The notes beneath the pieces are model-generated. The model was not told the DNA's origin and did no database searches. It saw nothing but the letters and a program-made list of their open reading frames with translations. This document shows positions 4,401 to 54,695 of a stretch of DNA of 64,000 bases, piece after piece. Position numbers and translations under genes: made by a program. Source of the stretch: Scyliorhinus canicula (Eukaryota); the NCBI RefSeq assembly GCF_902713615.1, contig NW_024055461.1, positions 1,287,877 through 1,351,876 on the forward strand, read 5' to 3'. Position 1 is the first letter of the stretch, and each line of letters begins with the position of its first letter.

Positions 4401-4414
4401 ACTAATTATCAATG

Positions 4415-23725: not shown

Positions 23726-25012
23726 ATGGAGAAACCGTGGAAATGTGCTGACTGTGGGAAGGGATTTAGAGCCCCATCTGTGCTGGAGATTCATTGCCGC
23801 AGTCACACTGGGCAGAGGCCATTCACCTGCTCTCAGTGTGGGAAGGAATTCACTCAGTTATCCAGTCTGTATGCACACCAGCGAGTTCACACTGGGGAAA
23901 AGCCATTCACCTGCTCCCAGTGTGGGAAGGAATTCACTCAGTTATCCAGTCTGCAGAGACACCAGCGAGTTCACACTGGGGAGAAGCCATTCACCTGCTC
24001 CCAGTGTGGGACGGGATTCAGTTCTTCATCCAACCTACGGAAACATCAGCGAGTTCACACGGGGGAGAGGCCATTCACCTGCTCCCTCTGTGAGAAGGGA
24101 TTCAGTGATTCATCCACCCTGCAGACACACCGGCGAATTCACACTGGGGAGAGGCCATTCATCTGCTCTCAATGTGGGAAGGGATTCATTAACTCGTCCA
24201 AACTTCGGAACCATCAGCGAGTTCACACTGGGGAGAGGCCGTTCACCTGCTCTCAGTGTGGGAAGGGATTCAATAACTCGTCCAACCTTCGGAACCATCA
24301 GCGAGTTCACACTGGGGAGAGGCCGTTCACCTGCTCTCAGTGTGGGAAGGGATTCAGTGATTTATCCACCATGAAGAGACATAAGCGAATTCACACTGGG
24401 GAGAGGCCATTCACCTGCTCTCAGTGTGGGAAAGGATTCAGTGATTTATCCACCCTGCGGAAACATCAGCGAATTCACACTGGGGAGAGGCCATTCATCT
24501 GCTCTCAGTGTGGGAATGGATTTACACATTTATCCAGTCTGCAGACACACCAGCGAATTCACACTGGGGAGAGGCCATTCACCTGCTCTCAGTGTGGGAA
24601 GAGATTCAATAACTCGTCCAACCTTCGGAACCATCAGCGAGTTCACACTGGGGAGAGGCCGTTCACCTGCTCTCAGTGTGGGAAGGGATTTGTTAGTTCA
24701 TCCACCATGAAGAGACATAAGCGAATTCACACTGGGGAGAGGCCATTCACCTGCTCTCAGTGTGGGAAAGGATTCAGTGATTTATCCACCCTGCGGAACC
24801 ATCAGCGAGTTCACACTGGGGAGAGGCCGTTCACCTGCTCTCAGTGTGGGAAGGGATTTGTTAGCTCATCCACCATGAAGAGACATAAGCGAATTCACAC
24901 TGGGGAGAGGCCATTCACCTGCTCTCAGTGTGGGAAGGGATTCAGTAATTCGTCCAACCTTCAGAAACACCGGCGAGTTCACACTGGAGAGAGGCAATTC
25001 ATCTGCTCTTAG
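23726..25012 (+). CDS. tandem C2H2 zinc-finger protein, 15 fingers, no effector domain; ends at a premature TAG in finger 16
   Basis: ATG of MEKPWKCADCGKGF, then 15 C-x2-C...H-x3-H units with TGE(R/K)PF linkers; CAG>TAG at FICS*. The leader exon acceptor lies near 23353. Confidence 0.85.
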   Translation: MEKPWKCADCGKGFRAPSVLEIHCRSHTGQRPFTCSQCGKEFTQLSSLYAHQRVHTGEKPFTCSQCGKEFTQLSSLQRHQRVHTGEKPFTCSQCGTGFSSSSNLRKHQRVHTGERPFTCSLCEKGFSDSSTLQTHRRIHTGERPFICSQCGKGFINSSKLRNHQRVHTGERPFTCSQCGKGFNNSSNLRNHQRVHTGERPFTCSQCGKGFSDLSTMKRHKRIHTGERPFTCSQCGKGFSDLSTLRKHQRIHTGERPFICSQCGNGFTHLSSLQTHQRIHTGERPFTCSQCGKRFNNSSNLRNHQRVHTGERPFTCSQCGKGFVSSSTMKRHKRIHTGERPFTCSQCGKGFSDLSTLRNHQRVHTGERPFTCSQCGKGFVSSSTMKRHKRIHTGERPFTCSQCGKGFSNSSNLQKHRRVHTGERQFICS

Positions 25013-25029
25013 TGTGGGAAGGGATTATA

Positions 25030-27395
25030 TAGAAACATGAAAAGGGAGAGCAGGAAGAGGCCATTTGGCCCTTTGCGCCTGATCTGCCATTCATTATGAT
25101 CATGGCTTATCATCCAACTCAATAGCTTAATCCCGCTTTCCCCTCCATATCCTTTGACCCCCTTCGCCTTCAGTGCGATATCTAACTGCTTCTTGCAAAC
25201 AAATAATGTATTGGCCTTAAAGTTTTCCTGTGGTAACAAATTCCACGGGCTCACCACTCTCTGGTTGAAGAAATTTCTCCTCATCTCTGTCTAAATGGTC
25301 TCCCCCGTATCCTCAGATTGCGACCTCTGGTTCTGTACACTCCCACCATCGGGAAAATCTTTCCTGCATCTACCTTGTTAAGTCCTGTTCGAATATTATA
25401 GGTTTCTATGAGATCCCCCTCATTCTTCTGAACTCCAGCGAATACAAACCTAACTGATTCAATCTCTCATACGTCAGTCCCACCATCCCAGGAATCAGTC
25501 TGGTAAACGCTCGCTGCACTCCCTCTAGAGCAAGAACATCCTTCCTCAGATAAGGAGACCAAAATTGCTCACAATATTCCAGGTATGGCCTCGCCACGGC
25601 CCTGTGTAATAATAGCAAGATATTCCTGCTCCTGTACTCGAATCCACTCGCAATGAAGGCTAGCATACCATTTGCCTTCTTTACCGCCTGCTGGAGCTGC
25701 ATGCTTACCTTCAGTGACTGGCGTACAAGGATACCCAGGTCTCATTGCACATTCCCCGCCTCTCCTAATCTATGGCCGTTCAGATAATAGTCTGCCTTCT
25801 CATTTTTAGTACCAATGTGGATAACCTCGCATTTCTCCAAATTATACTGCATCTGCCATTCATTTGCCCACTCACTCAACTTGTCCAAATCACTCTGAAG
25901 GATCTCTGCATCCTCCTCACAGCTCATCCTCCCAAGCAACTTGTGTGATCTGTAAATTTGGAGATATTGCATTTTGTTCCCTCATCTAAGTTGTTAATAT
26001 ATAAGTGGTGCAGCTGCCTCATGGTGCTGAGGATCATGGTTCAATCATGCCTGGGTCACTGTCTGTGTGCAGTCAAGTTCTCGATTTTGCGTGGGTCTCA
26101 CCCCCATAACCCCAAAGATGTGCAGTGGAGGGGAACTGGCCATGCTAAATTACCACTTATTTACAAAAATAGAATTGGGTACTTTAAATTTGAAAAGAAA
26201 AATCATTTATATATCTTGTGAATATCTGGGGCCCAGGCACTGATCCCAGCGGTACCCCACGAGCCACTGCCTGCCAATTTGAAAAAGATCCATTAATTCC
26301 TCCTCTTTGTTTCCTGTCTGCCAGTCAGTTTTTTTATCCATCTCAAGAGACGACCCCTAATCCCATGTGCTTTCATTTTACCCACTAATATCTTATGCAG
26401 GAATAAGTCGAAAGCTATCTGAAAGTCCAAATATACCACATCCACTGGCTCTCCCTCGTCAACTCGACCAGTTACACACTTGAAGAATTCCAGTAGATTT
26501 GTCAAGCATGATTTCCCCTTCATAAATCCATGCTGGCTCTGTCCGATCCTGCCACTGGTTTCGAAGTGCTTTGCTATAAAATCTTTGATAATGGATTCTA
26601 AAATTTGCCCCACTGCCGATGTCAGGCTTACTGGTCTATAATTTCCTGTTTTGTCTCGAGCTCCCTATTTAAATAGTGAGTTACATAAACCACCCTCCAA
26701 TGTGCAGGAATTGTTCCAGAGTCTATAGAATCCTGGAAGATGACCACCAATGCATCCATTATTTCTAGAGCCACTTCCTTAAGTACTTTGGGATACAGAT
26801 TATCAGGCCCTGGGGATTTATCAGCCTTCAATCCCATCAATTTCCCCAACACAATTTCTCGAATATTGATCTCCTTTAGTTCCTTCCTCTCACTAAATCC
26901 TGCGTTCCCCAACATTTCTAGCATCTAATTTGTGAAGCCAGAAGCAAAGTATGTATTTATTTGCTCACCCATTTCTTTGTCCCCTATTATACATTCCCCT
27001 GTTTCTGACTGAAAGGAACCTACATTTGTCTTCACCGATCTTTTTCTCTTCACATACCGACAGAAACTTATACAATCGGCCTAATTTCCTGTTTTGTGCC
27101 ATTCCCAACATCACCACTGCAGTTAGGGGGGTCTATATACACAACGCCCACTAATGTTTTTTGCCCCTTGGTGTTTCTCAGCTCTACCCATACAGATTCC
27201 ACATTGTTGGAGCTAATATCCTTCCTCACTATTGCATTAATTTCCTCTTTAACCAGCACTGCCACTCCATTGCCTTTTCCTTTTTGTCTGTCCTTCCTAA
27301 ATACTGAATATATTCAGTTCCCATCCCTGGTCATCCTGCAGCCATGTCTCCAGAATCCCGATTATCTCACACCCGTTTACATCTATTTACACAAT
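25030..27395 (-). mobile_element. CR1 LINE ORF2 (endonuclease-RT, internally deleted and frameshifted) inserted in the ZNF array; carries a SINE at about 26015-26200
   Basis: Minus-strand ORFs with VESVWVELRN, KADKSPGPD, SQHGFMKGKSCLTNLLEFF, YLDFQ.AFD, WQMQYNLEKC, RPYLEYC.QFWSPYL and RNFFNQRVV. Confidence 0.92.
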
Positions 27396-27428
27396 TCACT
27401 CGGTTATGCCGTCTGCAGTCACACCAGG

Positions 27429-28222
27429 GAGTTCACACTGGGGAGAGGCCGTTCACCTGCTCTCAGTGTGGGAAGGGATTCAATAACTCGTCCAACCTTC
27501 GGAACCATCAGCGAGTTCACACTGGGGAGAGGCCGTTCACCTGCTCTCAGTGTGGGAAGGGATTCAGTGATTTATCCACCATGAAGAGACATAAGCGAAT
27601 TCACACTGGGGAGAGGCCATTCACCTGCTCTCAGTGTGGGAAAGGATTCAGTGATTTATCCACCCTGCGGAAACATCAGCGAATTCACACTGGGGAGAGG
27701 CCATTCATCTGCTCTCAGTGTGGGAATGGATTTACACATTTATCCAGTCTGCAGACACACCAGCGAATTCACACTGGGGAGAGGCCATTCACCTGCTCTC
27801 AGTGTGGGAAGAGATTCAATAACTCGTCCAACCTTCGGAACCATCAGCGAGTTCACACTGGGGAGAGGCCGTTCACCTGCTCTCAGTGTGGGAAGGGATT
27901 TGTTAGTTCATCCACCATGAAGAGACATAAGCGAATTCACACTGGGGAGAGGCCATTCACCTGCTCTCAGTGTGGGAAAGGATTCAGTGATTTATCCACC
28001 CTGCGGAACCATCAGCGAGTTCACACTGGGGAGAGGCCGTTCACCTGCTCTCAGTGTGGGAAGGGATTTGTTAGCTCATCCACCATGAAGAGACATAAGC
28101 GAATTCACACTGGGGAGAGGCCATTCACCTGCTCTCAGTGTGGGAAGGGATTCAGTAATTCGTCCAACCTTCAGAAACACCGGCGAGTTCACACTGGAGA
28201 GAGGCAATTCATCTGCTCTTAG
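27429..28222 (+). pseudogene. headless duplicate of ZNF fingers 7-15
   Basis: Identical translation to the 3' part of the 23726-25012 ORF, with the same TAG. Confidence 0.85.
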
Positions 28223-28239
28223 TGTGGGAAGGGATTATA

Positions 28240-31293: not shown

Positions 31294-33004
31294 TTCAGGT
31301 TAGAAGATATTTCATTACCATTTCTGTTTTGAAATCCCCCAAATCATGCCACATTGCCATAAAGATGGGCTATGGTGGTTACGTGGTTCTTTTGTTTAAT
31401 TTGTCTTGGTGCTTCTCACAGAAGAAAACTATCAGGGTATGAGGGGCATGTTGTCTGAGGTGCACTGGGAAACTACATTACATGGTATGGTGGGTGACAG
31501 GCAATCACTAATATTTATGGAATTATTACAGATTTACATGGGGATCGGTTCGCTCAGTTGACTGGATGGCTGGTTTGTGCTGAGTGACACGAACAGCACA
31601 GGTTAAATTCCCATAGCGGCTGAGGTTAGCCATGGTCTGTCAGTATTTGTGCTCCACATGACCCTCCACCCACCCCTCTATATCCCCCCCCTCTATACCC
31701 TCCTTCCCCCCCCCCCCCCCCCCCCCCCCACCATCAGCATCTCCCTCTATTCCTTTCTCTCTCATGTATGTATCTAGCTTTACGTTCAATGTATTAATGC
31801 TGTTCACCTCAACCACTGGCTGTGGGAGTGAGTTGCACATTCTCACCACTCGCTGGTAAAGAGGTTTCTGCTGAAATTCCTATTGGATTATTGAATTCCT
31901 TCATAATCTGAAAGACTTCCTCCAGGTCACCCATCAGTCTTCTCCTTTCCAGAAAAAAGCAGCCCCAGACTTTCCTGGGTGTTAAATGCTCTCAGTTCTG
32001 TATATTATGAATCTTTGTTGCACCTTATCCAGTGCCTCTATTTCCTTTATCGAAATGGAGATCACCAATGTTGACACTGCTCCCAGTGTAGTCTAACCCC
32101 GGTTCTAAACAAGCTGAACATTTCCTCCGTGCTTTTCAATTCTATCTCTCTAGAATGGAACCCTATATATAATTGCCCCACACTTTGGGAAAGATGTGAA
32201 GTTCTCAGAGACGGTGTCGAGAACATTTACGAGAATGGTACCAGAGATGAGGGACACCAGTTAGTTGGAGTGACTGGAGCAACTAAATTTCACTCCTGAG
32301 ATCACAGCATCTGGAGGGTGGGGAATGGGGCCATTCAGCCCTTTGGGAACGTGTCGGCTCCCTGTGGAGGAAGCCAGTCTGTCTATTGCCCCGTTCTATC
32401 CCCAAATCCCTGTGAGTTTATTTCTCTCAATGCCTGTCCAATTTCCTATTGAAATCATTCCATCATCTCTGCATCTCCCACCCTCATAGGCGATAGGTTC
32501 CAGGTTGTTACCACTCCCTTTACATGTACACAAGGCTGTTCGAGCACAGAGGAGTCTATTTGGCCCATTTTTCCTATGCCAGCACTTTGTATAGCGACCC
32601 ATTTAATCCCAGAGTCCGGCTATTTTGTTTTCTTTTTCAGAATGCATCAAATTACATTTTGGAAATTGCATTCCAATGAGATTCCAGCACCATTTATCGA
32701 CAGTGCATTCCAAATCACAAAAACTCGCTGTGTTTTACAACAAATAATTGTGCATATGGTGTGTGTGAATTTTCACAGAGTATTCAAAATGGTGTCAATG
32801 ACGTGGGTATTACACAAAATTAAGACTCAATCTTTATCAATGATTCTGGTGAGGACACCGAGTGTAATATATGCGGACAATTGGAATAAATGTACATTTC
32901 TATCAAACCTCTCGACCACTGAACCTCCTAAAGTGTTTTAAAGCCAATGGAGTACTTTTGAATTGAAACATATTCACTGTTGTAATGTAGGAAGCTGTAA
33001 GTAC

Positions 33005-33970
33005 TGTTCTGGAAAATACAGAATGTGTCATTTGAAACATAGAGGTCTGCCAATATCTGGTCTGGGAGAGTGCAGGGAAAGATCCCACAAGAGGTTGGTG
33101 GCAGCTGAAAAGAGCAGAAACTGTGGCCAGCTCTTCTGTCAAAAATGCAGTCAATTTCAGTCTGTCAGAATTGTTATTACAACCTGCAGCAGGAGAAAGG
33201 GAAAAAGAAAAAAACAGAGTTTGCATACATTTCTTTGTGCTGTTGAAATATTGTAATGGACTGCCCCTTTAAGCCCCGTAGTCCTTTCCCCATCGGAGGT
33301 CCCGATCTCCCGCCAAAAATCACTAAGCGCGGGCTTCCCTCGCTCCTCCCCCCACGTGCGAGGCAGCAGACATCGGGAGAAAAGCAGAACGCGAGGGAGC
33401 AGCAGCTGGAGAGGGCAGAACGGAGCTCAGAGGAAGGAGGACAGAAAACAGAGAACCAGCATCAGGAGAGAGAGAGAGAGAGAGAGAGAGAACTCGGTTA
33501 TGGGAAAGGCAAAGCAAACAGCTGAGTGTAAACGGTAATAGATTTAAAGAAGGCTAGGATTTAAAGGTAAAATGTTAAGTTTGGGTCTGAAGGTCCCCAA
33601 CCAACCAGACAACATCCAAAATCACTAATCTGTTTACCTTTCTGTATAAGAAAGTGTTTACAACTTATTAAAAAAAGTATGATAATAATAAAATAATTTA
33701 ACCTGAAAAAGTGGTTATTAGCTTACTTCACTTCCTTAATAACGCAGGACCCAGGACATCAATGCTATTAAAGGGTAAGTAGGTAAAATTCTTCGGTGAA
33801 GGTATGGGTTATACCGGGGGATAACTTGAAAGGAGAGTTTGACCTGAATAGCACCCACAGAAGCCTGTATCGGAGTCAGGGAGTGAGAATCCCTGTTCAC
33901 CATTTTAGAGTATTGGCCCTTTTTTGGTTTAGGGGGAATTCTAAGACAGAGTGGTGGATTTACAAAAACA
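33005..33970 (+). repeat. 5' LTR (966 bp)
   Basis: TGTTCTGGAAAATAC...GGATTTACAAAAACA. It matches 41122-42086 except about 7 substitutions plus GA-run and A-run length changes (counted by eye). Confidence 0.95.
33116..33201 (+). other. WDFY3: captured WDFY3-like FYVE-coding fragment in the LTR (also at 41233-41318)
   Basis: Reads RNCGQLFCQKCSQFQS and, after a frameshifting deletion at GTCTG, CQNCYYNLQQEKG. The WDFY3 C-terminus as I recall it is RNCGQLFCQKCSRFQSEIKRLKISSPVRVCQNCYYNLQHERG. Confidence 0.8.
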
Positions 33971-33988
33971 TGGCGAGCCAGCCAGGAG
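33971..33988 (+). promoter_or_regulatory. primer-binding site for tRNA-Arg(ACG)
   Basis: TGGCGAGCCAGCCAGGAG is the reverse complement of the vertebrate tRNA-Arg(ACG) 3' end CUCCUGGCUGGCUCG-CCA; it abuts the LTR. Confidence 0.9.
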
Positions 33989-34118
33989 GCCTAGAATATT
34001 AGAAGTTTCTAGGTAAATAGGGGCTAGAATATTAGAAGTTTCTAGTTCCCAAGAAACGGTTGGAATATTAGAAGTTTCTAACCGGCACAAAGGCTAGAAT
34101 ATTAGAAGTTTCTAGCCT
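33989..34118 (+). other. four tandem stem-loops with invariant loop TATTAGAAGT (candidate packaging or dimerisation signal)
   Basis: Stems GCCTAGAA/TTCTAGGT, GGGGCTAGAA/TTCTAGTTCC, CGGTTGGAA/TTCTAACCG and AGGCTAGAA/TTCTAGCCT. Confidence 0.8.
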
Positions 34119-34540
34119 GTGTGTGAGTCAAACTTTACCTGCCGAGTTTAGTTTGGAAAGTCATGTGTGATTGGCTTTTGTAAGGATATTCTGTGGATCG
34201 AGGGGACAGAAGCTCAGGTTGGGTGTGAAAATTAGTAGACTAGAAGATACTGGCCCTGAGAAAAGTCTGCAAGACATTTTGGTGACAGCACTAAAATTTT
34301 GCATCCATTACTGGTAAAAGGGGCTAAAGAATAAATCATCCTCAGGGTAAGGCAGATTGTGCGGACATTTTCTGGAAAATAGGAACGCTTATCTTCAGAA
34401 ACCAATAATCAATCGACCCTTAACTAAAGCAGGAAGATAGTGCCTTGGTCAGCCTTGGATAGGGCCCAGAAAGGGTACTTATCCTTAATTTCAGAGTGCA
34501 CCTGAAAGGGACAACCAGGAACAGAAAAAAAATCCGAAAA

Positions 34541-37500
34541 ATGGCAATTAGGGTAATTCTCATGCCCTGGGATACGGTCAAGAGAAATGTAGCAGTGAAA
34601 CAGGAATGGAAGAAATTAAAAGAGCAAAAGAAATCCTGGAAAAAAGATATGTATCCAGACGGAGATATCTCCTTCTTTGTTAGAGTGCCAAAAGCCCTGC
34701 AATATACAGATCCAGTAGGGATCCTTAAAGCACTTTGTAAGTTTGCATTTGAAAAGCAAACTGAATCACTAATCTTGTTCGGACACAGACAGAAGCATGC
34801 AGCTGCTCAAGTGGGCAAAGTGTGCTCCAAACTGATTAAAATCATTGACGAAGAAAACATGAAAGAAATAATACAGATCCCTAGTGAACACAAAAGTAAC
34901 TCTGAAGTGGCAAACAAATATATAAAACAACTGCAGAAAAATGAAACATTAGAAATGGAAAATGACGAGGAATCAGTCCTAGAATCAGATAGCCGAGAGA
35001 ATTCGGACCCCTTTGAAAATTTCCCAAAGGGATACAATTTTCAATACCCAGATCCAAGTCCGTTTCAGGAAGAAAATTGGCCACGGCAATCTGCCACATA
35101 TAAAAAAGGAGCTTTTATCGATTATTTCTTTGAAACACAAGAAAGTGAAGAGGAACAAAGCCTAGTTGGGATTATGGCGCCTCCTGCGCTGGGACAGGAA
35201 GAATCATCATCCTCATCAGAGAATGAGGAAATAGTAAAACCAAGGAGAAGAATAGGGAATAGAAAAAATTCTAAACCATTAGAAATAGGGGATTATAGTG
35301 ATTACTGGAAACAACAACAACCTTCCACTTATCGACCAATAAATAAGGATTTACCGTATTATATGTATAATCCAGAAGCAAAAATGGTACACCATAGAGA
35401 TCAGGAAGGATGGGAAAGAGAGGTTACATCTAGGGGACTTAAAATAGGAGAAATATTAGGAGGAAGTCAACAAATTGATTCTACGAAATTACTGGAATTA
35501 CCAAACGTTACCCCCAAAGCTAAAATTTGGCAAATGAGCAAAGGGTATGACAGTTTCGGAAGAGCCATGAGTAGGGTAAGGAACAGCACAGAAACACAAG
35601 GCCAGATAACAGCAGCATTAAGACCACAAGAAAGGATACAGAATCGTCCAAGACCCCGAATAACTGCTCCTACTCCTATGGATAGGGCAAGTTATGCTCC
35701 ACGAGATAGCCAAGTACCAATTGCAATGTTTGAAGAATATATAGAACCGGTGGAAGATTTTGTACAACATGGTACCCCCTATTTTGAGGAAGAACCAGTA
35801 CAACGACAGATACATTTCTCAGAATATAGGACACCTTTAAGAACACCATGCCCCAGAAGTGAGAAAGTAGTTCAGTTATTTACACCAGGTCCAGAGGAAG
35901 GACAGGGAGGCATGGTACCGTATAAAATAGTAGCAGCAGTAATGAAGACAGCAGGCCCAAAGAAACATGGGGAGAGTAGAATTGAGTATTCACAGAGGTT
36001 AAAACAGTTAGCGAAGAAAATGGGGGCATCAGGAGAATCCACCAAATTGATTGATTCAGTGGGAGAAATAGTTACAGGCGAAGTCTCAGATTTAATAAAT
36101 GAGTTAGATTTGGGAAATGAGAGAGCTAACTTAATGAAAGAGATGACAGAGGCAGCATATGCAGGGGAACACCTCACAACATATGTCGACCGAATATATG
36201 AGGTTAATAAGGAAGAGGGGGCCGATGTAGTCAGATTCCTGAGGGAATTAGGACCCAAGATTCCAGGAGGAAATAGCCTCTCAACAATACTGTTAACGAC
36301 CTCTAGAAGAGAAATAGGAAGAGAACTGGTGAAATTTGATTTGGCAGGCAAAGCATTTAAGGATAAACACACAAAAGGGGAACAAAAAAGAGTAGCAGCT
36401 GCCCAAAATAATGTTTCAACACAAAATGCTCAGATTAGACCACCAAACCGACAGATACCTGACAAATCGGAACACAATCTAGCCCAACCAGCAATGCCAC
36501 AACATGGGTATAATCTGCGGTCACAAGGGCCACCTCCACCACAAAATCTAGATTACTTACCAAGGGAACAATTCCTAGCCCTCAGTCGGGAGGAAAGAGA
36601 CAGATTCATTGAGGATAGGAGAAGAAGAGCAGCTGGTCAGGGGAAAGATTTAATAAAAATAGATACTAGAAAAATAAGGATATTAAAACCAATTGATAAC
36701 ATGGAGGAAATAAGGAAACAGAAAGAGAAAAGTATTTTAAATGAAGCTTGGAAGAAGATGGAAGAAGTATTAATGGGAGCAAACCTAGCGATAGGTAAGA
36801 ATGACACAGGTTTAATTAGCAAGCGGTTCCAACACACAATTCACGGGGGACAACACAGACCTCAAAAACAGTATCCTTTGACTAGAGGAGCTAAGAGCGA
36901 GCTGGAGATAATAATCAAGGAATTGGAGCAGCAGGGGATTATTCAAGGGGTCACATATGCCTCAACAAATAGTCCACTTCAAGTAGTAAGAAAACCAGAT
37001 GGTACATTTAGGATGGTAACAAATTACAAAGCTTTAAATAAAGTCACAAAGAAGGACAAGAGATATTTAATAAATCCACAAGCTACCTTAGAGCAAGTCG
37101 CGGGAAAAACTTACTTAACTAGTATAGATTTGGCGAATGGATTCTGGAGTGTTCCATTAGACCCAGACAGCAGGGAGAAAACAGCATTCACCTTCGGAAC
37201 TAAGCATTATGTATATTGTAGACTGCCACAGGGATATGTTAATTCTCCGAATCACTTTCAGGCAATAATCAGGGAACTGATTAAAGATGATTTGGCTTTA
37301 GTATATATCGATGATATATTAATTGGAGATGACGATCAGGACAAACATGTGGAAAGAGTGGCCAGGATAATTAAGACACTTAGTGAAGCAGGCTTTAAAA
37401 TAGGGCTAAAGAAATGTCAAATTGGGAGAAGCGAAGTCAACTATTTGGGTTATTCAGTATCGAAGGAAGGTAGAGAGGCCAGTATTGAAATGAGGAAGAA

Positions 37501-39448
37501 GGTAGCTGAAATTACTGCGCCTGTTTCGAAAAAAGGGGTTCAAAAAATAATGGGAATATTGGGATATCTAAGGCCAGTAGTGAAAGACTTTAGTCTTTAT
37601 GCTAAAGCCATTTATCAAACATTGCAAGGGGATTTTATTTGGACCAGCGAGGCCCAGAGAGGGTTAGATCAGTTAAAGATAGCAATTGCGATATCGGGAC
37701 CATTAGTTGGGAGACAAGAAGAGGATGATTTAAGCATTAAATTAGACATATATAAAAATGGATATGGTATGGTGCTTGCTAATCTTAGCAATCAGACACC
37801 TATCAAACATCTGACAGGAAACTGGTCGAGAGCTGAACAAAAGTTTTCAAACATCGAGAAATGTCTAGCAGCTATAACAAAGAGAATAGCAGAGATAGAA
37901 AACTTGTCGGGTGGTAAGAAAATTTATGTCACAGCTGAGTTTTTGGAATTAAAGGAGCTAACCAGGAGACAGATTTGCCAGCAAGGCGCGAATACAGCTC
38001 GATGGGAAAGATGGGAAACCATTCTTCTAAACCCTGACTTAATGTTTATTCATAACATTAAAAAGGGACAGAAACTTGATGAACCAGTTAGTAAAACGGA
38101 GTTGGTGAATGCTTGGGTATTATATACTGATGGTAATAAAGTCAAGAAGGACGAAGAACAAGCCAGATGGGCATTCATTTTAAAAAATTCAGGAAAAATA
38201 GTAGTGGAGGAACAGGGAATAATCATTGGATCAGCTCAGACAGCTGAGGTAGAGGGAGTATTGCAAGGGTTAAAGGAGTGTCAGCAGCGAAAGCTGCAGG
38301 AAGTTACCGTTGTAACCGACAGCTTTTTCGTGCAGCAAGGATTGGAGAAAGATTTGGAGTTTTGGAAACTAAACGGTTGGACGAACGGTAGAAATAAACT
38401 ACTGGAACAGAAAGAACAGTGGGAAGAGATAGATAAAATTTTAGCCGATATGGAGATCCAGACAATTCATCAAAAAGCACACACAAAAGGAACTGGGGAA
38501 CTGTGTAAGGGGAATCAGGAAGTGGATGAATTAGCCAGACTTAGGACAATAATCTTGGGGACTCTTGGGAACACAGCAGCCGACCTTCAAATGATAATTA
38601 AGCAAATACATGAAGCCACAGGACATGGGGGTCATGTTGTAGTCGCAAGGGAGTTGAAAAAGTTGGGAATTAAAATAGCCTATTGGAGACAACATTTAAC
38701 TGCAGTAAGGAGAAAATGTGAGAGATGTATGGCCTGTGGAGGACAGAGAGGGAATAAAACATATGGGAGCATAAAAACTGAGAAACCAATGCAGGAATGG
38801 TCATTAGATTATGCAGGACCACTTTTTCCCAGAAGCAGCAACGGTAATTTGTATTTTTTAGTCAAAGCTGATAGCTGCACGGGAGAAATTGACCTTAGAG
38901 CAACCAGCAAAGCAAATGGAGCCACGACCAAAAGGGTATTGGCAGAAATGATGACCTCCAGAGGTAGACCAGAATCGATCCGAATGGACAACGCGCCGCA
39001 CTTTAGAAACAATACTGTTATTAACTTTTGTGCTGACAGAGGAATAACAATCAATTGGGCCGTGAAATATGCACCTGAGAGTAATGGAATGGCTGAGAGG
39101 TCTGTAAGAAAAGTAAAGGATTGGATCATAAAGAATCAGAATAATAAAGGCTGGGATAAAGACATTGAAAGAATAGTATTTGATCTTAATAGTAATCTTG
39201 GAACCTCTGTCTCCCAGGGACAAGGGGACCCAAGTGAATCTGGGAATTATCAAGTAGGAGACGAAGTTTGGGTGAAGCTACCAACTAAGACTGTGGGGAA
39301 AATCATTCGTGAGACTGTAAAATGTAAAGACAAGATTGTTCAGATTCTGGGTACACATACAATTGAATTAGAGAAGCATGGTGTCTGGAGCAAAAGGAAT
39401 TGTGTCACAATTGAAACACACGACCCAGTGAGCATCAGAGGAGTTTGA
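34541..39448 (+). CDS. Gag-Pol polyprotein, 1635 aa from the first ATG: Gag, RT, tether, RNase H, integrase; no recognisable protease
   Basis: GYNLR (36506), RPQKQYPL (36857), DLANGFW, RLPQGYVNSP, YIDD (37304), WSRAEQKFSNIEK tether, YTDG (38123)...AQTAE...TDS...KGNQEVD RNase H, H-x4-H...CERC, and D...D-35-E integrase (WSLDYAGP, RMDN, NGMAER). Confidence 0.93.
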   Translation: MAIRVILMPWDTVKRNVAVKQEWKKLKEQKKSWKKDMYPDGDISFFVRVPKALQYTDPVGILKALCKFAFEKQTESLILFGHRQKHAAAQVGKVCSKLIKIIDEENMKEIIQIPSEHKSNSEVANKYIKQLQKNETLEMENDEESVLESDSRENSDPFENFPKGYNFQYPDPSPFQEENWPRQSATYKKGAFIDYFFETQESEEEQSLVGIMAPPALGQEESSSSSENEEIVKPRRRIGNRKNSKPLEIGDYSDYWKQQQPSTYRPINKDLPYYMYNPEAKMVHHRDQEGWEREVTSRGLKIGEILGGSQQIDSTKLLELPNVTPKAKIWQMSKGYDSFGRAMSRVRNSTETQGQITAALRPQERIQNRPRPRITAPTPMDRASYAPRDSQVPIAMFEEYIEPVEDFVQHGTPYFEEEPVQRQIHFSEYRTPLRTPCPRSEKVVQLFTPGPEEGQGGMVPYKIVAAVMKTAGPKKHGESRIEYSQRLKQLAKKMGASGESTKLIDSVGEIVTGEVSDLINELDLGNERANLMKEMTEAAYAGEHLTTYVDRIYEVNKEEGADVVRFLRELGPKIPGGNSLSTILLTTSRREIGRELVKFDLAGKAFKDKHTKGEQKRVAAAQNNVSTQNAQIRPPNRQIPDKSEHNLAQPAMPQHGYNLRSQGPPPPQNLDYLPREQFLALSREERDRFIEDRRRRAAGQGKDLIKIDTRKIRILKPIDNMEEIRKQKEKSILNEAWKKMEEVLMGANLAIGKNDTGLISKRFQHTIHGGQHRPQKQYPLTRGAKSELEIIIKELEQQGIIQGVTYASTNSPLQVVRKPDGTFRMVTNYKALNKVTKKDKRYLINPQATLEQVAGKTYLTSIDLANGFWSVPLDPDSREKTAFTFGTKHYVYCRLPQGYVNSPNHFQAIIRELIKDDLALVYIDDILIGDDDQDKHVERVARIIKTLSEAGFKIGLKKCQIGRSEVNYLGYSVSKEGREASIEMRKKVAEITAPVSKKGVQKIMGILGYLRPVVKDFSLYAKAIYQTLQGDFIWTSEAQRGLDQLKIAIAISGPLVGRQEEDDLSIKLDIYKNGYGMVLANLSNQTPIKHLTGNWSRAEQKFSNIEKCLAAITKRIAEIENLSGGKKIYVTAEFLELKELTRRQICQQGANTARWERWETILLNPDLMFIHNIKKGQKLDEPVSKTELVNAWVLYTDGNKVKKDEEQARWAFILKNSGKIVVEEQGIIIGSAQTAEVEGVLQGLKECQQRKLQEVTVVTDSFFVQQGLEKDLEFWKLNGWTNGRNKLLEQKEQWEEIDKILADMEIQTIHQKAHTKGTGELCKGNQEVDELARLRTIILGTLGNTAADLQMIIKQIHEATGHGGHVVVARELKKLGIKIAYWRQHLTAVRRKCERCMACGGQRGNKTYGSIKTEKPMQEWSLDYAGPLFPRSSNGNLYFLVKADSCTGEIDLRATSKANGATTKRVLAEMMTSRGRPESIRMDNAPHFRNNTVINFCADRGITINWAVKYAPESNGMAERSVRKVKDWIIKNQNNKGWDKDIERIVFDLNSNLGTSVSQGQGDPSESGNYQVGDEVWVKLPTKTVGKIIRETVKCKDKIVQILGTHTIELEKHGVWSKRNCVTIETHDPVSIRGV

Positions 39449-39476
39449 GATTCTTCGAATCTCACTCAGGGGTGCA

Positions 39477-39632
39477 ATGACAGAAGGAGGCTTAACAGGC
39501 CTTAATGGTATGATGTACATCAAGGATATGGAAAATAAACCAGTTCAAAAAGAAATGGTGGCAAAAGAAATCCGGAAGTCCTGGAGAGGGCATTTCTGGG
39601 TTAACCAAATGAAAACAGAAAGTACAAATTAA
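39477..39632 (+). CDS. putative small accessory ORF A (51 aa)
   Basis: MTEGGLTGLNGMMYIKDMENKPVQKE...; support is limited to an open frame just after pol. Confidence 0.25.
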   Translation: MTEGGLTGLNGMMYIKDMENKPVQKEMVAKEIRKSWRGHFWVNQMKTESTN

Positions 39633-39677
39633 AGAATAGGGCCCTCTCCACCCTTGATCTGTTCATTTGATTTTCAG

Positions 39678-39806
39678 ATGGAAAAAATAAATAACGAACC
39701 AGTTCACAAGAAGGAAGAGAACTACACTCCAGAGAGGAATCTTTTAGACAGGATTGGGGGGGAAACTAATGATGCAATTGGCTACATATTTGAGGGAATT
39801 AAATGA
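39678..39806 (+). CDS. putative small accessory ORF or exon B (42 aa) behind a strong splice acceptor
   Basis: CCCTCTCCACCCTTGATCTGTTCATTTGATTTTCAG|ATG, then MEKINNEPVHKKE... Confidence 0.3.
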   Translation: MEKINNEPVHKKEENYTPERNLLDRIGGETNDAIGYIFEGIK

Positions 39807-40642
39807 CAGAACCCCGAGGAAAACTTTACGGGGTAGAAACAAATCAAAATATCAAATTATAACTGGACAGTGAAACCTCCGGTCAGACATCTCTAACTGG
39901 ACATTAGCTGATGGGTGATCTGCGGTCTCCATGGAGTATGTACTACGTGGTGGAATTATTAAGGGTCTCGGCAGATAGCAGCGACTGACGAGGAACCCCA
40001 ATATGATAAATGACAATAGTTTAAGAATTTTAGTAGCTTGATACTACGGCGGGAAAATTGTTACCAATGCAGCAAAACAATATTGCATTGAAGAGCTGTA
40101 ATCGTTATTATAAAAAATAAAAATTAAAAAAAAATATTAAATTTTCATGTAAATTGATAGGGACTGTTATATATATATGATAAGGGGGGTATGTGTGTCG
40201 TTAAAGAACTTGATCCGCATTTCTAAACTCTGTGAATGTTTTAATAGAGGGGTAGTTTAGTGTGTTTTCTTGATTTAACTATATAGTACATTACAAATAA
40301 TATTGATGTTGTTTATATGCCATATTTAGTATGTAATAATTATTGTTCCCAAAGCCAAGAAGGAATGTTTCGATATTGATATTAAATTTTGTTAACAGTT
40401 GAAAATATGTAAAGTTGTAACACACAGTCTATTTGTGTGGTTAGGTAATGAATAATGTGTTAAGATAAGATTTTTTTTTTACTATGTATTTAACAATAGG
40501 GAGAATTTGTTTGAAAAAAAAGACGGTTCAATGTGGTTTTGCAAATGCTGTAATGAAAAATATACACTTTGTCAGAAAGATATTCTCTCATGTAAACCAG
40601 AGGTTGGCAGACTTACATGATTCACGACAATGTTAGACATTA

Positions 40643-41152
40643 ATGGGGAAGTTAGGAATACAAGCAGGATCAATTGAACATTTTAAATTAATGAAACAAA
40701 GGGATCAGTGGGTGGTACATGATATCACAATTACCCCATTCCAATCAGAAATGGAAAACTATTTGGACGACGGAAAAATGGGGCACGTAACAACCAGTGA
40801 TGGACAAAAGATCTGTTTGGTTACTGATGAACTGAGTTGTGTGCTGGTTCTAAGGGACATGAGGAAGCTTATACGGTGCTGCTATCCCAAGGAAGTAAAA
40901 TGCTTTGGAGGTAGTGGAACACACGGAAAGCTAATGTGTTACCTTCCTGAGCGGCTATGGCTATGGTTCACGGTAATTGGACTGGAACGGAAAACAAGAC
41001 TCTTATTGACACTGGTCTGTGATATGCATACAAATGACAAAGATCAGGGATGTATGTTAGTACAATTGGATGGGGGGACAATAAACCAAATTATAGTAAT
41101 GTTTCAAATGTCAAGACGGGGTGTTCTGGAAAATACAGAATGTGTCATTTGA
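40643..41152 (+). CDS. putative accessory ORF C (169 aa, Cys-containing, unknown function)
   Basis: Open frame running across the PPT into U3; no homology recognised and no Env hallmarks. Confidence 0.4.
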   Translation: MGKLGIQAGSIEHFKLMKQRDQWVVHDITITPFQSEMENYLDDGKMGHVTTSDGQKICLVTDELSCVLVLRDMRKLIRCCYPKEVKCFGGSGTHGKLMCYLPERLWLWFTVIGLERKTRLLLTLVCDMHTNDKDQGCMLVQLDGGTINQIIVMFQMSRRGVLENTECVI

Positions 41153-41373
41153 AACATAGAGGTCTGCCAATATCTGGTCTGGGAGAGTGCAGGGAAAGAT
41201 CCCACAAGAGGTTGGTGGCAGCTGAAAAGAGCAGAAACTGTGGCCAGCTCTTCTGTCAAAAATGCAGTCAATTTCAGTCTGTCAGAATTGTTATTACAAC
41301 CTGCAGCAGGAGAAAGGGAAAAAGAAAAAAACAGAGTTTGCATACATTTCTTTGTGCTGTTGAAATATTGTAA
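41050..41373 (+). CDS. putative U3-overlapping ORF D (107 aa) with the WDFY3-derived peptide in frame
   Basis: Starts before the PPT and reads ...AEKSRNCGQLFCQKCSQFQSVR...; position analogous to bel2/nef-type genes. Confidence 0.35.
   Translation: MYVSTIGWGDNKPNYSNVSNVKTGCSGKYRMCHLKHRGLPISGLGECRERSHKRLVAAEKSRNCGQLFCQKCSQFQSVRIVITTCSRRKGKRKKQSLHTFLCAVEIL
41113..41121 (+). promoter_or_regulatory. polypurine tract
   Basis: AAGACGGGG immediately before the TG of the 3' LTR. Confidence 0.7.
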
Positions 41374-42086
41374 TGGACTGCCCCTTTAAGCCCCGTAGTC
41401 CTTTCCCCATCGGAGGTCCCGATCTCCCGCCAAAAATCACTAAGCGCGGGCTTCCCTCGCTCCTCCCCCCACGTGCGAGGCAGCAGACATCGGGAGAAAA
41501 GCAGAACGCGAGGGAGCAGCAGCTGGAGAGGTCAGAACGGAGCTCAGAGGAAGGAGGACAGAAAACAGAGAACCAGCATCAGGAGAGAAGAGGAGGAGAG
41601 AGAGAGAACTCGGTTATGGGAAAGGCAAAGCAAACAGCTGAGTGTAAACGGTAATAGATTTAAAGAAGGCTAGGATTTAAAGGTAAAATGTTAAGTTTGG
41701 GTCTGAAGGTCCCCAACCAACCAGACAACATCCAAAATCACTAATCTGTTTACCTTTCTGTAGAGAAAGTGTTTACAACTTATAAAAAAAAAGTATGATA
41801 ATAATAAAATAATTTAACCTGAAAAAGTGGTTATTAGCTTACTTCACTTCCTTAATAACGCAGGACCCAGGACATCAATGCTATTAAGGGGTAAGTAGGT
41901 AAAATTCTTCGGTGAAGGTATGGGTTATACCGGGGGATAACTTGAAAGGAGAGTTTGACCTGAATAGCACCCACAGAAGCCTGTATGGGAGTCAGGGAGT
42001 GAGAATCCCTGTTCACCATTTTAGAATATTGGCCCTTTTTTGGTATAGGGGGAATTCTAAGACAGAGTGGTGGATTTACAAAAACA
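41122..42086 (+). repeat. 3' LTR (965 bp)
   Basis: TGTTCTGG...TACAAAAACA followed by the GTAC TSD. Confidence 0.95.
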
Positions 42087-45000
42087 GTACGTATGTGTAA
42101 TTACATTTAGTTTTGAAATTGTTATTTTCATAGTGTATTCCCTGTCATTAGTAACATGGTCAAGGAAGCCCTTTTATACCTCGAACATGCAGCTTCCTGC
42201 AGCCATTTCACCTTCTGTACCTTTTCTGTATTAACCACATTGATTTCACAGCAAAAAGCAATAATTAAATTTATGATTATTCAGTAGTGAACATAGATTA
42301 TCATACATGAATTGGTGTGTGAGGTAGTTATCTTGTAAAGACTAGTTCTTTATTTTAAAAAGTAACACTTCCAACCAAAATGTTTCCAGAAACTGCAGAG
42401 CTATCAGAATTTGTTTGAAAAAATAAATTACTTTATAATTTTGAGAAGTTACAAGACATCATATTCTGCCAAGACTATGTGGGCTGGGCAGAGGTGTAAT
42501 GGTATTGTTACTGGGCTAGTAATCCAGAGACCCAGGTTAATGCTCTAGGGATCTGGGATCGAATCTGCCTATGACAGTTTTTGAAATTGAATAAAAGTCT
42601 CAAATTCAAAGTCTAATGTTGACATTGTTGATCGTTGTAAAAACCCGTCTGGTTCACTAATGTCGTTTATGAAATCTGCTCTCCTTTTGTGGCCTGTCCT
42701 GCACGTGACTCCAGATCCACAGCAATGTTGTGGTTGATTTGTAAGTCTCCTTAAATAGCCTCACAAGACATGCAGTTCAAGGGCATTGGAATGAGCAGTA
42801 AATGCTGGTCCAGCCAGTGACGCCCACCTCCCATTAATGAATACTTTTTAAGAAGGTTTATTGTTCAATCTGAAGACTAGTAAGAAACTCTCTTTGATTG
42901 GATTTGATTAATTGTCACGTGTATCAAGGTACAGTGAAAAATATTGTTCTACATTTCCAGACAGATTGCTCCATACATGAAAAAACATAGGACATACAAT
43001 AAACATACAATGTAAATACATAGACACAGACAGCGGGTAAAGCGTATGGATTATAGTACTACTCAGAAAAGAACCAGTGTATCTTGTATTAACCAAATGT
43101 ATTAATTAGTTTGTAACATGATTAAATAAGTAGTGATCCTTAATTGAGTGACAATTAATGAAACTTTTTTTTTATTCATTGGGCATTGGCGTTGCAGGCT
43201 GTGCCAGCATTTATCACCCATTCTTATCGATTCCAGGCTTGGGTCACTGTCTGTGCGGATTCTGCACTTTCTCCCCATGTATGCGTCCCCACGTAGACAT
43301 GGGGAGAAGGTGTAATCTCCACACCGACAGCCACCCAAGGTTAAAATTGAACCTGAGTCCCTGGCACTGTGAGACAACAGTGGTAACCACTGTGCCACGC
43401 TAACAGTTGACTCTGGTGGGATATGAGCCCACAACCTTTGAATCCCTTACTTGCGATTAAGTAGAAGTCCAACACACTATCCATTGTGCTACAGAGTCAT
43501 ACATATCCTTTAATCCCTTTAGCCCCAAGAGCTGTATCAAACCCCTTCTTCAAATTGTACACTGTATTGGCCTCCACGACTTTCTGTGGTAATGAATTCC
43601 ACAGGCTCGTCACTCTCTCTAGGTGAAAAAATTTCTCCTCACCTCAGTCTTAAAAGTTTTACTCCATGTCCTCAAGCTATGACCCCCTAGTTCTGGACTT
43701 CCCACCATTGGGAACATTCTTTATGAATCTACTCTGTCCACTCCTGTTAGAATTTTATACGTTTCTTTGAGATCTTCTCATTAAAAAAGAGATGGAGAAG
43801 CAGAATTAGGCCATTCAGCCCATCGCGTTTGCTCTGCCATTCGATCATGGCTGATAAGTTTCTCGTCCCCATTATCCTGCCTTCTCCCCATAACACCTGA
43901 GCCTCTTATTCAAGAACCAATATATCTCTGTCTTAAAAAGACTGACGGGCATGGCCTGGTGCCATGTGGCCATCAATTAATTTCCTTTCCCCCAAGAGAA
44001 ATCAAGGACTTGACACTGTGTGTTTGAGACAAAGCTGATTTATTTCACAAACAACAAGATATTAAACACTCGCCCAGCTCAGTTACAGGGAATCGAAATA
44101 AACCCCAATTGTCAGATTGAAGATGGTTCAGTTCTGGGTGTGATTATCAGTGGCAGTAACAGCAGAATCAACACTTTTCAGATGAACAGAGGGTAAATAT
44201 AAATTAGTTTGACAGTTCAGGAATCATCAGTGGCATCTTATGATGTGGAGAAATTAGCTCAACAATTCTATGAACTAAAATTTAGTCTGGCCTGGTGTCA
44301 CCAAGCTGAAATCCAGTCTTTCTCTGACACATTATTCTTAATGACATAGCTGACAGGTTAAGAGTGAAAAAGTCAACTGTTTAGCAGTACGGGGAAGAGG
44401 CAGGTTTGTAGATGTTCTACAGTGTTACAAACGGGCTCGTTGGATCTTATTCTGTCCCATCTTACATTCAGCTGACAGTAAAATGACTAAAATACTGCAA
44501 CATACAGGCATTTGGGGACAATGGTGAGATTGCTGCTCAGATTAGTTAAAGTCTCCATATTGTAAAATAGATCTAGAAGGACTGGAGAAGATGCAGGAAA
44601 AGATATTTGAATTATGCCTGAACTGGCAGGTTACACCCAGTAAGAAAGATTGGACAGGGCATAACATTTTCTCTTGAAAAGGGAATGAAGGATGACCTGA
44701 TCCTGTAAGACTATGAACAGGTTTGATATGATAGACAAGTGGAAGATGTTTCCACTGAATAAGAATAAATATGAGTTAGTGATTGATTAATCTAATGTGC
44801 AGTTCAGAGGGAGATCACTCACACACTTCACATGTGCAAAGGAATTTCCTCAGTTTTCCCACTGGTTAACACTCCAACTTTAAAAGCCCAGACAATTTGA
44901 TCCAATTGCAGCACATTGTTATGGACGAGGGGCAGTTTAACTGTTCTGTCCAGGAAGACAAAAATCACTGTTCACCTGAACCTGCTCAGACCCCAACCCG

Positions 45001-54195: not shown

Positions 54196-54519
54196 CCGGC
54201 ATTGGGGGAACACACCCATCCGGGCCGGAGATTTAAGGTCAGTGCAAAAAAAATGAAATCCCGCCGGCGCCAGCTGGTTTCACAGGCTGCCGGCGGGATT
54301 TGCACAACGCCGGTTTTTTACCGGCGGGAGAATTCGAAAACCTGCGGGAGCGGAAATAACGCCGCTTCCCGCCAATTCTCCGACCCTGCGTGGGGTCGGA
54401 GAATTTCGCCCCAGGTTTGGGAAACCTCTCCACCCACCAGGCTGATTCATCGCTCCCGTGTTCCACAATATTCCTCTTACCCTTTGTGGATCTGACACAA
54501 AAGCTTCTCTACCTCGCCT

Positions 54520-54695
54520 GGGGATGGTTTAGCTCACTGGGCTAAATAGCTGGCTTTTAAAGCAGGCCAGCAGCACGGTTCAATTCCCGTACCAGCATCC
54601 CCGGACAGGTGCCGGAATGTGGCGACTAGGGGCTTTTCACAGTAACTTCATTGAAGCCTACTCGTGCCAAGAAGCGATTTTCATTTCATTTTTCA
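54520..54695 (+). mobile_element. short tRNA-derived SINE
   Basis: GGTTTAGCTCACTGGGCTAAATAGCTGGC head, GGTTCAATTCCC B box, TTTTCATTTCATTTT tail. Confidence 0.75.

What the first reader, a model, noticed from the sequence alone, without database searches (positions are those of the whole stretch)
36506..36880. Young, intact retroviral Gag-Pol with no protease domain
Seen: the Gag GYNLR motif (aa about 671 of the ORF track) is followed by about 60 Arg/charge-rich residues. The sequence then resembles the foamy RT leader (IRILKP...GKNDTGLISKRFQH...RPQKQYPL). There is no room for a roughly 100-aa retropepsin, and I find no hydrophobic-D[ST]GA active site anywhere in the 1635 aa. Known: retroviruses and Ty3/gypsy elements normally carry PR between Gag and RT, and prototype foamy virus has it directly before this RT leader. 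RT, RNase H and integrase look catalytically intact, the frame is unbroken, and the LTRs are about 1% apart with a clean TSD. Inference: either a lineage that replicates without its own protease (uncleaved polyprotein, host protease, or PR in trans), or a PR-deleted copy mobilised by a helper.
Basis: partly seen in the sequence, partly recalled or inferred. Interest (0 to 1): 0.88.

Follow-up and report, generated by a model that had tools for sequence, protein, structure and literature searches.

The report
Protease-deleted copy of catshark ERV
This is one copy of an already published foamy-like endogenous retrovirus family of the small-spotted catshark that lost its protease segment in a single in-frame internal deletion, which joins gag to pol; it is an ordinary defective provirus, not evidence for a retrovirus lineage that lives without a protease.

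Summary
Window 33005-42086 is a 9.1-kb LTR provirus with 966-nt LTRs (10 mismatches, 3 one-base indels) and a 4-bp target-site duplication. It has one unbroken 1635-codon ORF (34541-39448). Its C-terminal 870 residues are a foamy-virus-type RT, RNase H and integrase with all catalytic columns conserved. No retropepsin is present in any frame.

The interpretation changes. The element belongs to the published family ERV-Spuma.0-Sca of Scyliorhinus canicula (PMC10699275). All eight closest relatives carry an Asp-Thr/Ser-Gly-Ala protease segment 100-130 residues upstream of a conserved RT-leader landmark. The published family consensus carries such a segment too, between stretches that match the window's Gag end and its RT leader. 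That paper annotates gag and pol in one frame, and the gag-to-pol span is about 420 nt longer than here.

So this copy has one in-frame deletion of roughly 120-140 codons. It removed the protease and, apparently, the gag terminator, which created the Gag-Pol fusion. I could not determine when the deletion arose or whether other copies share it. A protease-less lineage is unlikely. Interest is low.

The parts
33001..33004 (.). Left copy of the 4-bp target-site duplication (GTAC)
33005..33970 (+). 5' LTR, 966 nt, TG..CA
   Evidence: its first ~19 nt match the start of the published ERV-Spuma.0-Sca consensus
33971..33988 (+). Primer-binding-site-like stretch beginning TGG, directly after the 5' LTR; the tRNA was not identified
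   Evidence: read from the sequence
34541..39448 (+). Single fused gag-pol ORF of 1635 codons plus stop. It has 0 stops and 0 frameshifts. The protease gene is missing through 1 in-frame deletion of roughly 120-140 codons relative to the family consensus.
34541..36658 (+). Gag-like part, Gag by position only. There are no Pfam or PDB hits. Its only homologues are gene-model fragments of Scyliorhinus canicula (97% and 90% identity) and S. torazame.
36506..36880 (+). The stretch named in the finding: the end of the Gag-like part, a basic/helical linker, and the RT leader. A protease would be expected here and is absent.
36659..36826 (+). Pol leader (aa 707-762). This is the first stretch homologous to the relatives' Pol, where it follows the protease.
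   Evidence: HMM positions 99-155, i-E 3e-4
36986..37456 (+). Reverse transcriptase core (RVT_1, aa 816-972; YIDD at 922-925). Homology to foamy PR-RT starts at aa 764.
37640..38026 (+). Connection / RNase-H-like tether domain (aa 1034-1162)
38111..38539 (+). RNase H (aa 1191-1333). The invariant acidic columns D1197, E1236, D1260 and D1329 are conserved.
38588..39076 (+). Integrase zinc-binding and catalytic core (aa 1350-1512). H1357, H1362, C1393, C1396, D1423 and D1483 are conserved; E1519 lies just beyond the Pfam match.
39449..41121 (+). Post-pol region of 1.67 kb. It has no env-sized ORF: the longest is 169 codons, 40643-41152, running into the 3' LTR. It has no Pfam hits and no similarity to the relatives' downstream ORFs. 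The 441-codon third ORF of the published consensus is not open here; the number and kind of breaks were not determined.
41122..42086 (+). 3' LTR, 965 nt
42087..42090 (.). Right copy of the 4-bp target-site duplication (GTAC)

Best explanation
The element is a defective copy of the catshark foamy-like ERV family ERV-Spuma.0-Sca. The family normally encodes gag, a terminator, then protease-RT-RNase H-integrase in the same reading frame, followed by a third ORF. In this copy one in-frame internal deletion of roughly 120-140 codons removed the protease-coding segment and, by the published annotation arithmetic, the gag terminator. Gag is therefore joined directly to the RT leader as one 1635-codon ORF.

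The fusion ORF is a by-product of the deletion, not an adaptation. The copy cannot supply a protease itself. It integrated through a normal integrase reaction (TG..CA LTR ends, 4-bp duplication).

Shown: the protease is absent here, it is present in the relatives and in the family consensus, and the rest of pol is intact.

Inferred: that the deletion is of the template-switch or slippage type, because the two edges in the consensus look like a short imperfect direct repeat (read by eye only).

Open: whether the deletion arose in the parental RNA or during reverse transcription (my guess about 55%) or in place after integration (about 35%).
For: - Family identity. Other S. canicula loci encode 97% and 90% identical Gag fragments. 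The published consensus starts with the same LTR letters, has its first ORF at offset 1538 against 1537 here, and its machine-read text matches the window closely on both sides of the junction.
- The family has a protease. Between those two matching stretches the consensus text has about nine extra printed lines at a pitch of about 40 nt, and one of them encodes Asp-Thr-Gly-Ala. The consensus gag-start-to-pol-end span is 5328 nt against 4908 nt here, with gag and pol both annotated in frame 3.
- The relatives have a protease. Seven of the eight closest Pol proteins have D[TS]GA 102-131 aa upstream of the KNDxG landmark; the eighth starts downstream of that point. There is a weak RVP hit in P0008 and Spuma_A9PTase C-terminal-half hits in P0001 and P0002. 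The only PDB hit of their protease profile is a retroviral protease (3nr6, E 1.4).
- The closest relative, L001, has gag, one stop, then pro-pol in one frame.
- No protease remnant exists in any frame of the window element.
- An unbroken ORF at this LTR divergence is not surprising under neutrality with respect to stops: P(no new stop) is about 0.3.
Against: - The protease in the family consensus was read by eye from a cropped, machine-read PDF. No tool could align it, and the deletion size is an estimate.
- That consensus is a composite of up to 293 fragments, so the share of copies that carry the protease is unknown.
- The paper's own CDD table lists no retropepsin hit for this consensus.
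- No second full copy could be fetched: the assembly file was too large and there is no other copy in the window.
- The LTRs show 3 indels in 967 columns while the 4.9-kb ORF has no frameshift. This could hint at constraint, although 2 of the 3 indels lie in simple-repeat runs.
Confidence: 0.85

Rival explanations
1. A protease-less sub-lineage: the deletion variant is itself a propagating subfamily. Its Gag-RT-integrase fusion is used uncleaved, or is processed by a protease supplied by full-length copies or by the host.
For: - The ORF is completely open and every RT, RNase H and integrase catalytic column is kept.
- The deletion is in frame.
- The LTRs are only about 1% apart with a clean duplication.
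- There are no frameshifts despite 3 LTR indels.
- From general knowledge: foamy viruses use their protease sparingly.
Against: - The family consensus and all relatives carry a protease.
- An in-frame outcome has a prior of 1 in 3.
- An open ORF is expected about 30% of the time with respect to stops.
- No second copy with the same deletion has been seen, and none could be looked for here.
Confidence: 0.1
2. A very divergent or relocated protease is hidden elsewhere in the element: in the Gag-like part, in another frame, or in the post-pol region.
For: The relatives' proteases are themselves missed by the precomputed Pfam annotation and by CDD in the paper, so standard models are insensitive in this clade.
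Against: - A clade-specific HMM finds no protease part in any of the six frames.
- hhalign gives probability 0.2%.
- There is only one D[ST]G in 1635 aa, and it is the RT-leader landmark.
- There is no other + strand ORF of 50 aa or more between 35166 and 39476.
- The low-confidence model of aa 401-820 is essentially all helical.
Confidence: 0.02
3. A host-domesticated Gag-Pol fusion gene kept open by selection.
For: The ORF is open over 4.9 kb, and the LTR indels contrast with no frameshift in the ORF.
Against: - Both LTRs, the duplication and the PBS-like site are still present and about 99% alike.
- No orthologue is known.
- The nearest proteins are broken gene-model fragments of other copies.
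- The locus sits in a zinc-finger gene array like any other insertion.
Confidence: 0.02
4. An assembly artefact: reads from different copies collapsed and dropped the protease segment.
For: The family has many near-identical copies (293 fragments reported in PMC10699275).
Against: - The frame is kept across the junction.
- Both flanks are continuous and the LTRs pair normally.
- There is no N run near the element; the only one is at 87-219.
Confidence: 0.01

Closest known systems
ERV-Spuma.0-Sca, the consensus foamy-like ERV of Scyliorhinus canicula (PMC10699275, J Microbiol Biotechnol 2023)
   Same: - Same host genus.
- Same LTR start.
- Same offset of the first ORF (1538 against 1537).
- Near-identical text on both sides of the Gag/RT junction.
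- Similar total length (9220 against 9082 nt).
   Different: - The consensus has roughly 350-420 nt more between gag start and pol end, including a segment with the Asp-Thr-Gly-Ala motif.
- It has a terminator between gag and pol, and an open 441-codon third ORF.
- Its LTRs are about 100 nt shorter.
- The paper never mentions a protease, and its CDD table lists none for this consensus.
Foamy virus PR-RT (PDB 7kse, 7ksf, 7o24) and prototype foamy virus integrase (3l2q)
   Same: These are the best solved relatives of RT-RNase H (E 1e-82, query 764-1334 against chain 148-741) and of integrase (E 1e-13). The 4-bp duplication fits foamy-type integration (general knowledge).
   Different: - The chain's N-terminal protease, about 100 residues plus linker, has no counterpart here.
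- Gag shows no similarity to foamy Gag.
- In this family gag and pol share a frame, whereas true foamy viruses express Pol from its own spliced mRNA (general knowledge).
Unnamed foamy-like viral contigs from public assemblies: L001 (Logan SRR24834163), L002/L003 and L004 (ENA)
   Same: Their Pol is 36-45% identical over the leader and RT. They share the leader, the KNDxG landmark and the YxDD spacing. L001 has gag and pol in one frame.
   Different: - They carry the protease segment.
- They have a stop between gag and pol (L001) or different frames for the two (L002).
- They have several large downstream ORFs.
- Their Gag proteins show no detectable similarity to the window's.
Internally deleted, non-autonomous ERV copies in general, for example ETn relative to MusD in mouse (from general knowledge, not tested here)
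   Same: An LTR-flanked copy of an autonomous family that lacks part of the coding region yet has young LTRs and a target-site duplication.
   Different: Here most of gag-pol is kept and open. No evidence was obtained that the deleted form has multiplied.

Membership tests
Foamy-like endogenous retrovirus (Spumaretrovirinae-like ERV), family ERV-Spuma.0-Sca | Provirus structure: paired LTRs with TG..CA ends, a target-site duplication, and a PBS-like site after the 5' LTR | tested here: met
Foamy-like endogenous retrovirus (Spumaretrovirinae-like ERV), family ERV-Spuma.0-Sca | RT-RNase H-integrase closest to foamy viruses | tested here: met
   Foamy PR-RT E 1e-82, against Ty3 at 1e-42 and MLV at 1e-28; PFV integrase E 1e-13
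Foamy-like endogenous retrovirus (Spumaretrovirinae-like ERV), family ERV-Spuma.0-Sca | Sequence identity with the published family consensus | tested here: met
   Same LTR start and ORF offset. A 16-mer from the window is found in the consensus text, and the neighbouring lines match. The comparison was made by eye only.
Foamy-like endogenous retrovirus (Spumaretrovirinae-like ERV), family ERV-Spuma.0-Sca | Protease encoded directly upstream of the RT leader | tested here: not met
   Absent from this copy in all frames. Present in the relatives and in the consensus.
Foamy-like endogenous retrovirus (Spumaretrovirinae-like ERV), family ERV-Spuma.0-Sca | env gene | tested here: not met
   No ORF over 169 codons after pol, no Pfam hit, and no similarity to the relatives' downstream ORFs
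Foamy-like endogenous retrovirus (Spumaretrovirinae-like ERV), family ERV-Spuma.0-Sca | Foamy-type Gag (Gag_spuma) | tested here: not met
   No Pfam or PDB hit at E<=10. The paper also found no Gag domain.
Foamy-like endogenous retrovirus (Spumaretrovirinae-like ERV), family ERV-Spuma.0-Sca | Foamy expression hallmarks: Pol from its own spliced mRNA, an internal promoter, and a transactivator | not testable with these tools
   The same-frame gag/pol arrangement in the consensus annotation and in L001 argues instead for read-through-type expression, but this is inference.
Retropepsin (peptidase A2/A9) | Asp-Thr/Ser-Gly active-site loop in a hydrophobic context within a beta-rich domain of about 100 aa | tested here: not met
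Deletion derivative of an autonomous ERV (defective provirus) | Lacks a coding segment that the family consensus and relatives possess, and is otherwise collinear | tested here: met
Deletion derivative of an autonomous ERV (defective provirus) | The same deletion shared by several independent insertions (a propagating non-autonomous subfamily) | not tested
   Other genomic copies could not be fetched, and there are none in the window.

The most novel reading that the evidence does not exclude
The protease-deleted Gag-RT-integrase fusion is not a one-off. It would be the master form of a young subfamily that has spread in catshark genomes without a protease of its own. That would make it a natural example of a retrovirus-derived element whose polyprotein is used uncleaved or is processed in trans.
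Probability: 0.1. Interest if true: 0.55.

Novelty: already known. Interest (0 to 1): 0.13.

Why it matters
It matters little in itself: defective proviruses with internal deletions are the rule among ERVs.

Three modest points remain.
- A single 'intact but domain-less' copy should be judged against its family before a new replication strategy is inferred.
- The protease of this clade of fish and shark foamy-like viruses is divergent enough to be missed by Pfam and CDD. The published domain table for this family therefore lists none, although the consensus text encodes the active-site motif.
- This 'foamy-like' family and its closest relative have gag and pro-pol in one frame separated by a stop, unlike true foamy viruses.

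Tried and rejected
- Pfam at E<=10 on aa 1-800, 501-820 and 601-780 gave nothing.
- A PDB sequence search with the Gag-like part gave nothing.
- A word-indexed protein search with the Gag-like part gave no hit.
- An exhaustive representative search with aa 1-763 found only four catshark gene-model fragments, all within aa 1-431, so none spans the junction.
- Fetching the DNA of those other copies failed because the assembly files were too large.
- An exact look-up of the window protein found nothing on record.
- A single-sequence AlphaFold model of aa 401-820 had mean pLDDT 50 and was all helical. Foldseek against the PDB gave no match below E = 1, so this says nothing about a capsid fold.
- The relatives' Gag and downstream ORFs show no similarity to the window element.
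- The tRNA-like hit at 43406-43499 does not match the PBS-like site.
- I did not use the third protein search or the second structure job. The exhaustive search had already shown that no predicted protein covers the junction.
- I did not align the window copy to the published consensus or list their differences (see referred steps).

Full report
**Anatomy**

Direct repeats at 33005-33970 and 41122-42086 are LTRs. They run TG..CA, are 966 and 965 nt long, and differ by 10 mismatches (6 transitions, 4 transversions) and 3 one-base indels over 967 columns. Two of those indels lie in simple-repeat runs. The LTRs are flanked by a 4-bp duplication, GTAC. A TGG-initiated PBS-like stretch follows the 5' LTR.

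One ORF runs from 34496 to 39448. From its first ATG at 34541 it is 1635 codons with no stop or frameshift. The 1.67 kb between pol and the 3' LTR holds no ORF above 169 codons. It has no Pfam hits and no similarity to the downstream ORFs of relatives. No other copy of the element lies in the window.

**Checking the observation**

Pfam finds RVT_1 (aa 816-972), the RNase-H-like connection (1034-1162), RNase_H (1191-1333), a weak zinc-binding match and rve (1414-1512). It finds nothing upstream of aa 816. At E<=10 it finds nothing in aa 1-800, 501-820 or 601-780.

The best solved relatives are foamy-virus protease-RT chains (7kse, 7ksf, 7o24; E about 1e-82). The alignment begins at query 764 against chain residue 148, so the chain's protease and linker are unmatched. 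Integrase matches prototype foamy virus integrase.

The only D[ST]G in the whole ORF is at aa 755. It sits inside a KNDxG landmark that all relatives share in the RT leader.

Aligned with seven relatives, the window keeps the invariant RT YxDD (922-925) and upstream Asp (863). It also keeps four acidic RNase H columns (1197, 1236, 1260, 1329), the integrase His/His/Cys/Cys columns (1357, 1362, 1393, 1396) and the Asp/Asp/Glu columns (1423, 1483, 1519). Assigning those columns to catalytic roles is inference from their position in the Pfam domains.

The one unverified item is the 'Gag GYNLR motif'. The N-terminal 700 aa have no Pfam or PDB match and are Gag by position only.

**What the relatives show**

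The closest proteins in the large collection are eight Pol proteins, 25-45% identical in the alignment to the leader and RT. They come from public assemblies and one fish genome.

Seven of the eight have D[TS]GA 102-131 residues upstream of the KNDxG landmark. The eighth starts downstream of that point. YxDD follows the landmark by 167-172 residues in all of them and by 169 in the window.

Their N-terminal segment is poorly seen by standard models:
- P0008 gives a weak RVP hit (E 0.0019).
- P0001 and P0002 match only the C-terminal, leader half of Spuma_A9PTase.
- The only PDB hit of a three-sequence profile is a retroviral protease, 3nr6, at E 1.4.

I built an HMM from the protease plus leader of the eight relatives (156 positions) and searched the ORF and all six-frame stop-free pieces of the element. 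Only the leader part (positions 99-155) matches, at aa 707-762 with i-E 3e-4. The protease part matches nothing. hhalign of the protease profile against aa 601-763 gives probability 0.2%.

The protease is therefore absent, not merely divergent.

The relatives' contigs carry a separate gag, pol with protease, and large downstream ORFs. In the closest one, L001, gag and pro-pol are in one frame separated by a single stop. The protease's N-terminal part lies upstream of the called start codon.

**Identity of the family**

An exhaustive profile-free search with aa 1-763 found only four proteins:
- two Scyliorhinus canicula RefSeq models, 97% identical to aa 139-431 and 90% identical to aa 1-159;
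- two S. torazame models, 59% and 78% identical over the matched stretches.

All four match Gag only within aa 1-431 (one S. torazame model also carries a short integrase piece, see passing notes).

A 2023 paper (PMC10699275) reports 293 Spuma-like ERV fragments in S. canicula and a 9220-nt consensus, ERV-Spuma.0-Sca. The consensus has LTRs of 866 and 869 nt, a 'gag' CDS at 1538-3796, a 'pol' CDS at 3920-6865 in the same frame, and a third CDS at 6989-8314.

Three things tie the window element to that family:
- The consensus begins with the same letters as the window LTR.
- Its first ORF starts at offset 1538, against 1537 here.
- A 16-mer from the window's RT leader occurs in the machine-read consensus text, and the neighbouring lines match the window closely.

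**The decisive comparison**

In that text (cropped lines, about three quarters of the letters visible, line pitch about 40 nt) I looked at the stretch matching the window's Gag C-terminal part and the stretch matching its RT leader. They are separated by about nine additional lines that have no counterpart in the window. One of those lines encodes Asp-Thr-Gly-Ala in a hydrophobic context, as in the relatives.

The published coordinates agree independently. The gag start to pol end span is 5328 nt in the consensus and 4908 nt here.

The family therefore has a protease. The window copy has one in-frame deletion of roughly 120-140 codons that removes it. Because the consensus places a terminator between gag and pol in the same frame, the deletion apparently removed that terminator too, which is why a single Gag-Pol ORF results.

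The two edges in the consensus look like a short imperfect direct repeat. That is the usual footprint of template switching during reverse transcription or of replication slippage. I read this by eye and no tool verified it.

Break count for this copy:
- protease: 1 deletion (in frame);
- gag, RT, RNase H, integrase: 0 stops, 0 frameshifts;
- third ORF: not open, number and kind of breaks not determined.

**Mechanism and rivals**

The most likely reading (0.85) is an ordinary defective provirus of a protease-bearing family.

The timing is open. The deletion may have been present in the packaged RNA, made during reverse transcription, or arisen in place afterwards. Helper mobilisation is therefore possible but not shown.

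The open ORF needs no special explanation. At 1.04% LTR divergence about 25 substitutions are expected in the ORF, with about 1.2 new stops, so P(no stop) is about 0.3. An in-frame deletion has a prior of one in three. The lack of frameshifts despite three LTR indels is mildly notable but weak evidence.

A propagating protease-less subfamily (0.10) cannot be excluded without a copy census. A hidden protease, domestication, and assembly artefact are each at or below 0.02.

The age is about 2-10 Myr for rates of 2.5e-9 to 0.5e-9 per site per year.

**Limits**

No second full copy could be read. The consensus evidence is from a published composite sequence seen only as cropped machine-read text. 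The paper's CDD table lists no retropepsin for this consensus, which I attribute to the divergence of this clade's protease. The single-sequence structure model was of low confidence and its fold search was empty.

1. None was entered into a tool or used as evidence.
2. When reading, I copied several cropped lines of the published consensus into my private reasoning and worked out where the extra lines fall relative to the window. I stopped once I noticed this. Those letters and the exact place are not repeated in the notes or in this report, and nothing was deleted.

Noticed in passing
window 23690-25026, 27344-28237, 48571-49349, 57810-57958: Arrays of 84-nt (28-aa) C2H2 zinc-finger repeats. 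The ORFs at 23690-25012 and 27344-28222 carry 14 and 9 zf-C2H2 units, so the provirus sits inside a tandem zinc-finger gene cluster.
   Followed up: partly
PMC10699275, supplementary Table S5a and consensus text: ERV-Spuma.0-Sca is the only one of the paper's ten consensus genomes without any retropepsin-type CDD hit, and the paper never mentions a protease. Yet its consensus text encodes the Asp-Thr-Gly-Ala motif. The protease of this clade escapes standard domain models.
   Followed up: partly
L001:2880-3122 (Logan SRR24834163 contig): In the closest relative, gag and pro-pol lie in one frame with a single stop between them. The called Pol start is only 10 residues before the active-site motif, so the protease N-terminus lies upstream of it. 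This suggests read-through-type expression rather than the foamy spliced-pol scheme.
   Followed up: partly
window 33994-34045 and 34063-34115: A 52-55-nt imperfect direct repeat (85% identical) in the 5' leader between the PBS-like site and the ORF start.
   Followed up: no
window 33005-33970 against the published consensus LTR: The window LTRs are about 100 nt longer (966 nt) than the 866/869-nt LTRs annotated in the published consensus. The cause was not examined.
   Followed up: no
P0123, P0124 (Scyliorhinus torazame gene models): These S. torazame gene models contain pieces of this ERV family's Gag. P0124 also has a 19-aa piece of integrase joined to a Gag piece, and P0123 is named 'Macro domain-containing protein' in UniRef. 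They are probably chimeric models over ERV copies, and they show that the family or a sister family is present in a second catshark species.
   Followed up: partly
window 1861-3800, 7006-7408, 12429-13313, 53399-54208: Large tandem arrays: a C-rich 14-nt-based array of about 1.9 kb, a 29-nt array, a 52-nt array, and G-rich 37- and 21-nt-based arrays.
   Followed up: no
window 9062-9151 (-), 43406-43499 (-), 54523-54597 (+): Three tRNA-like hits from ARAGORN (Phe-aaa twice, Arg-tct with an oversized length). They are probably tRNA-derived repeats. None matches the PBS-like site.
   Followed up: partly
window 87-219: A run of 133 N, left as it is.
   Followed up: no
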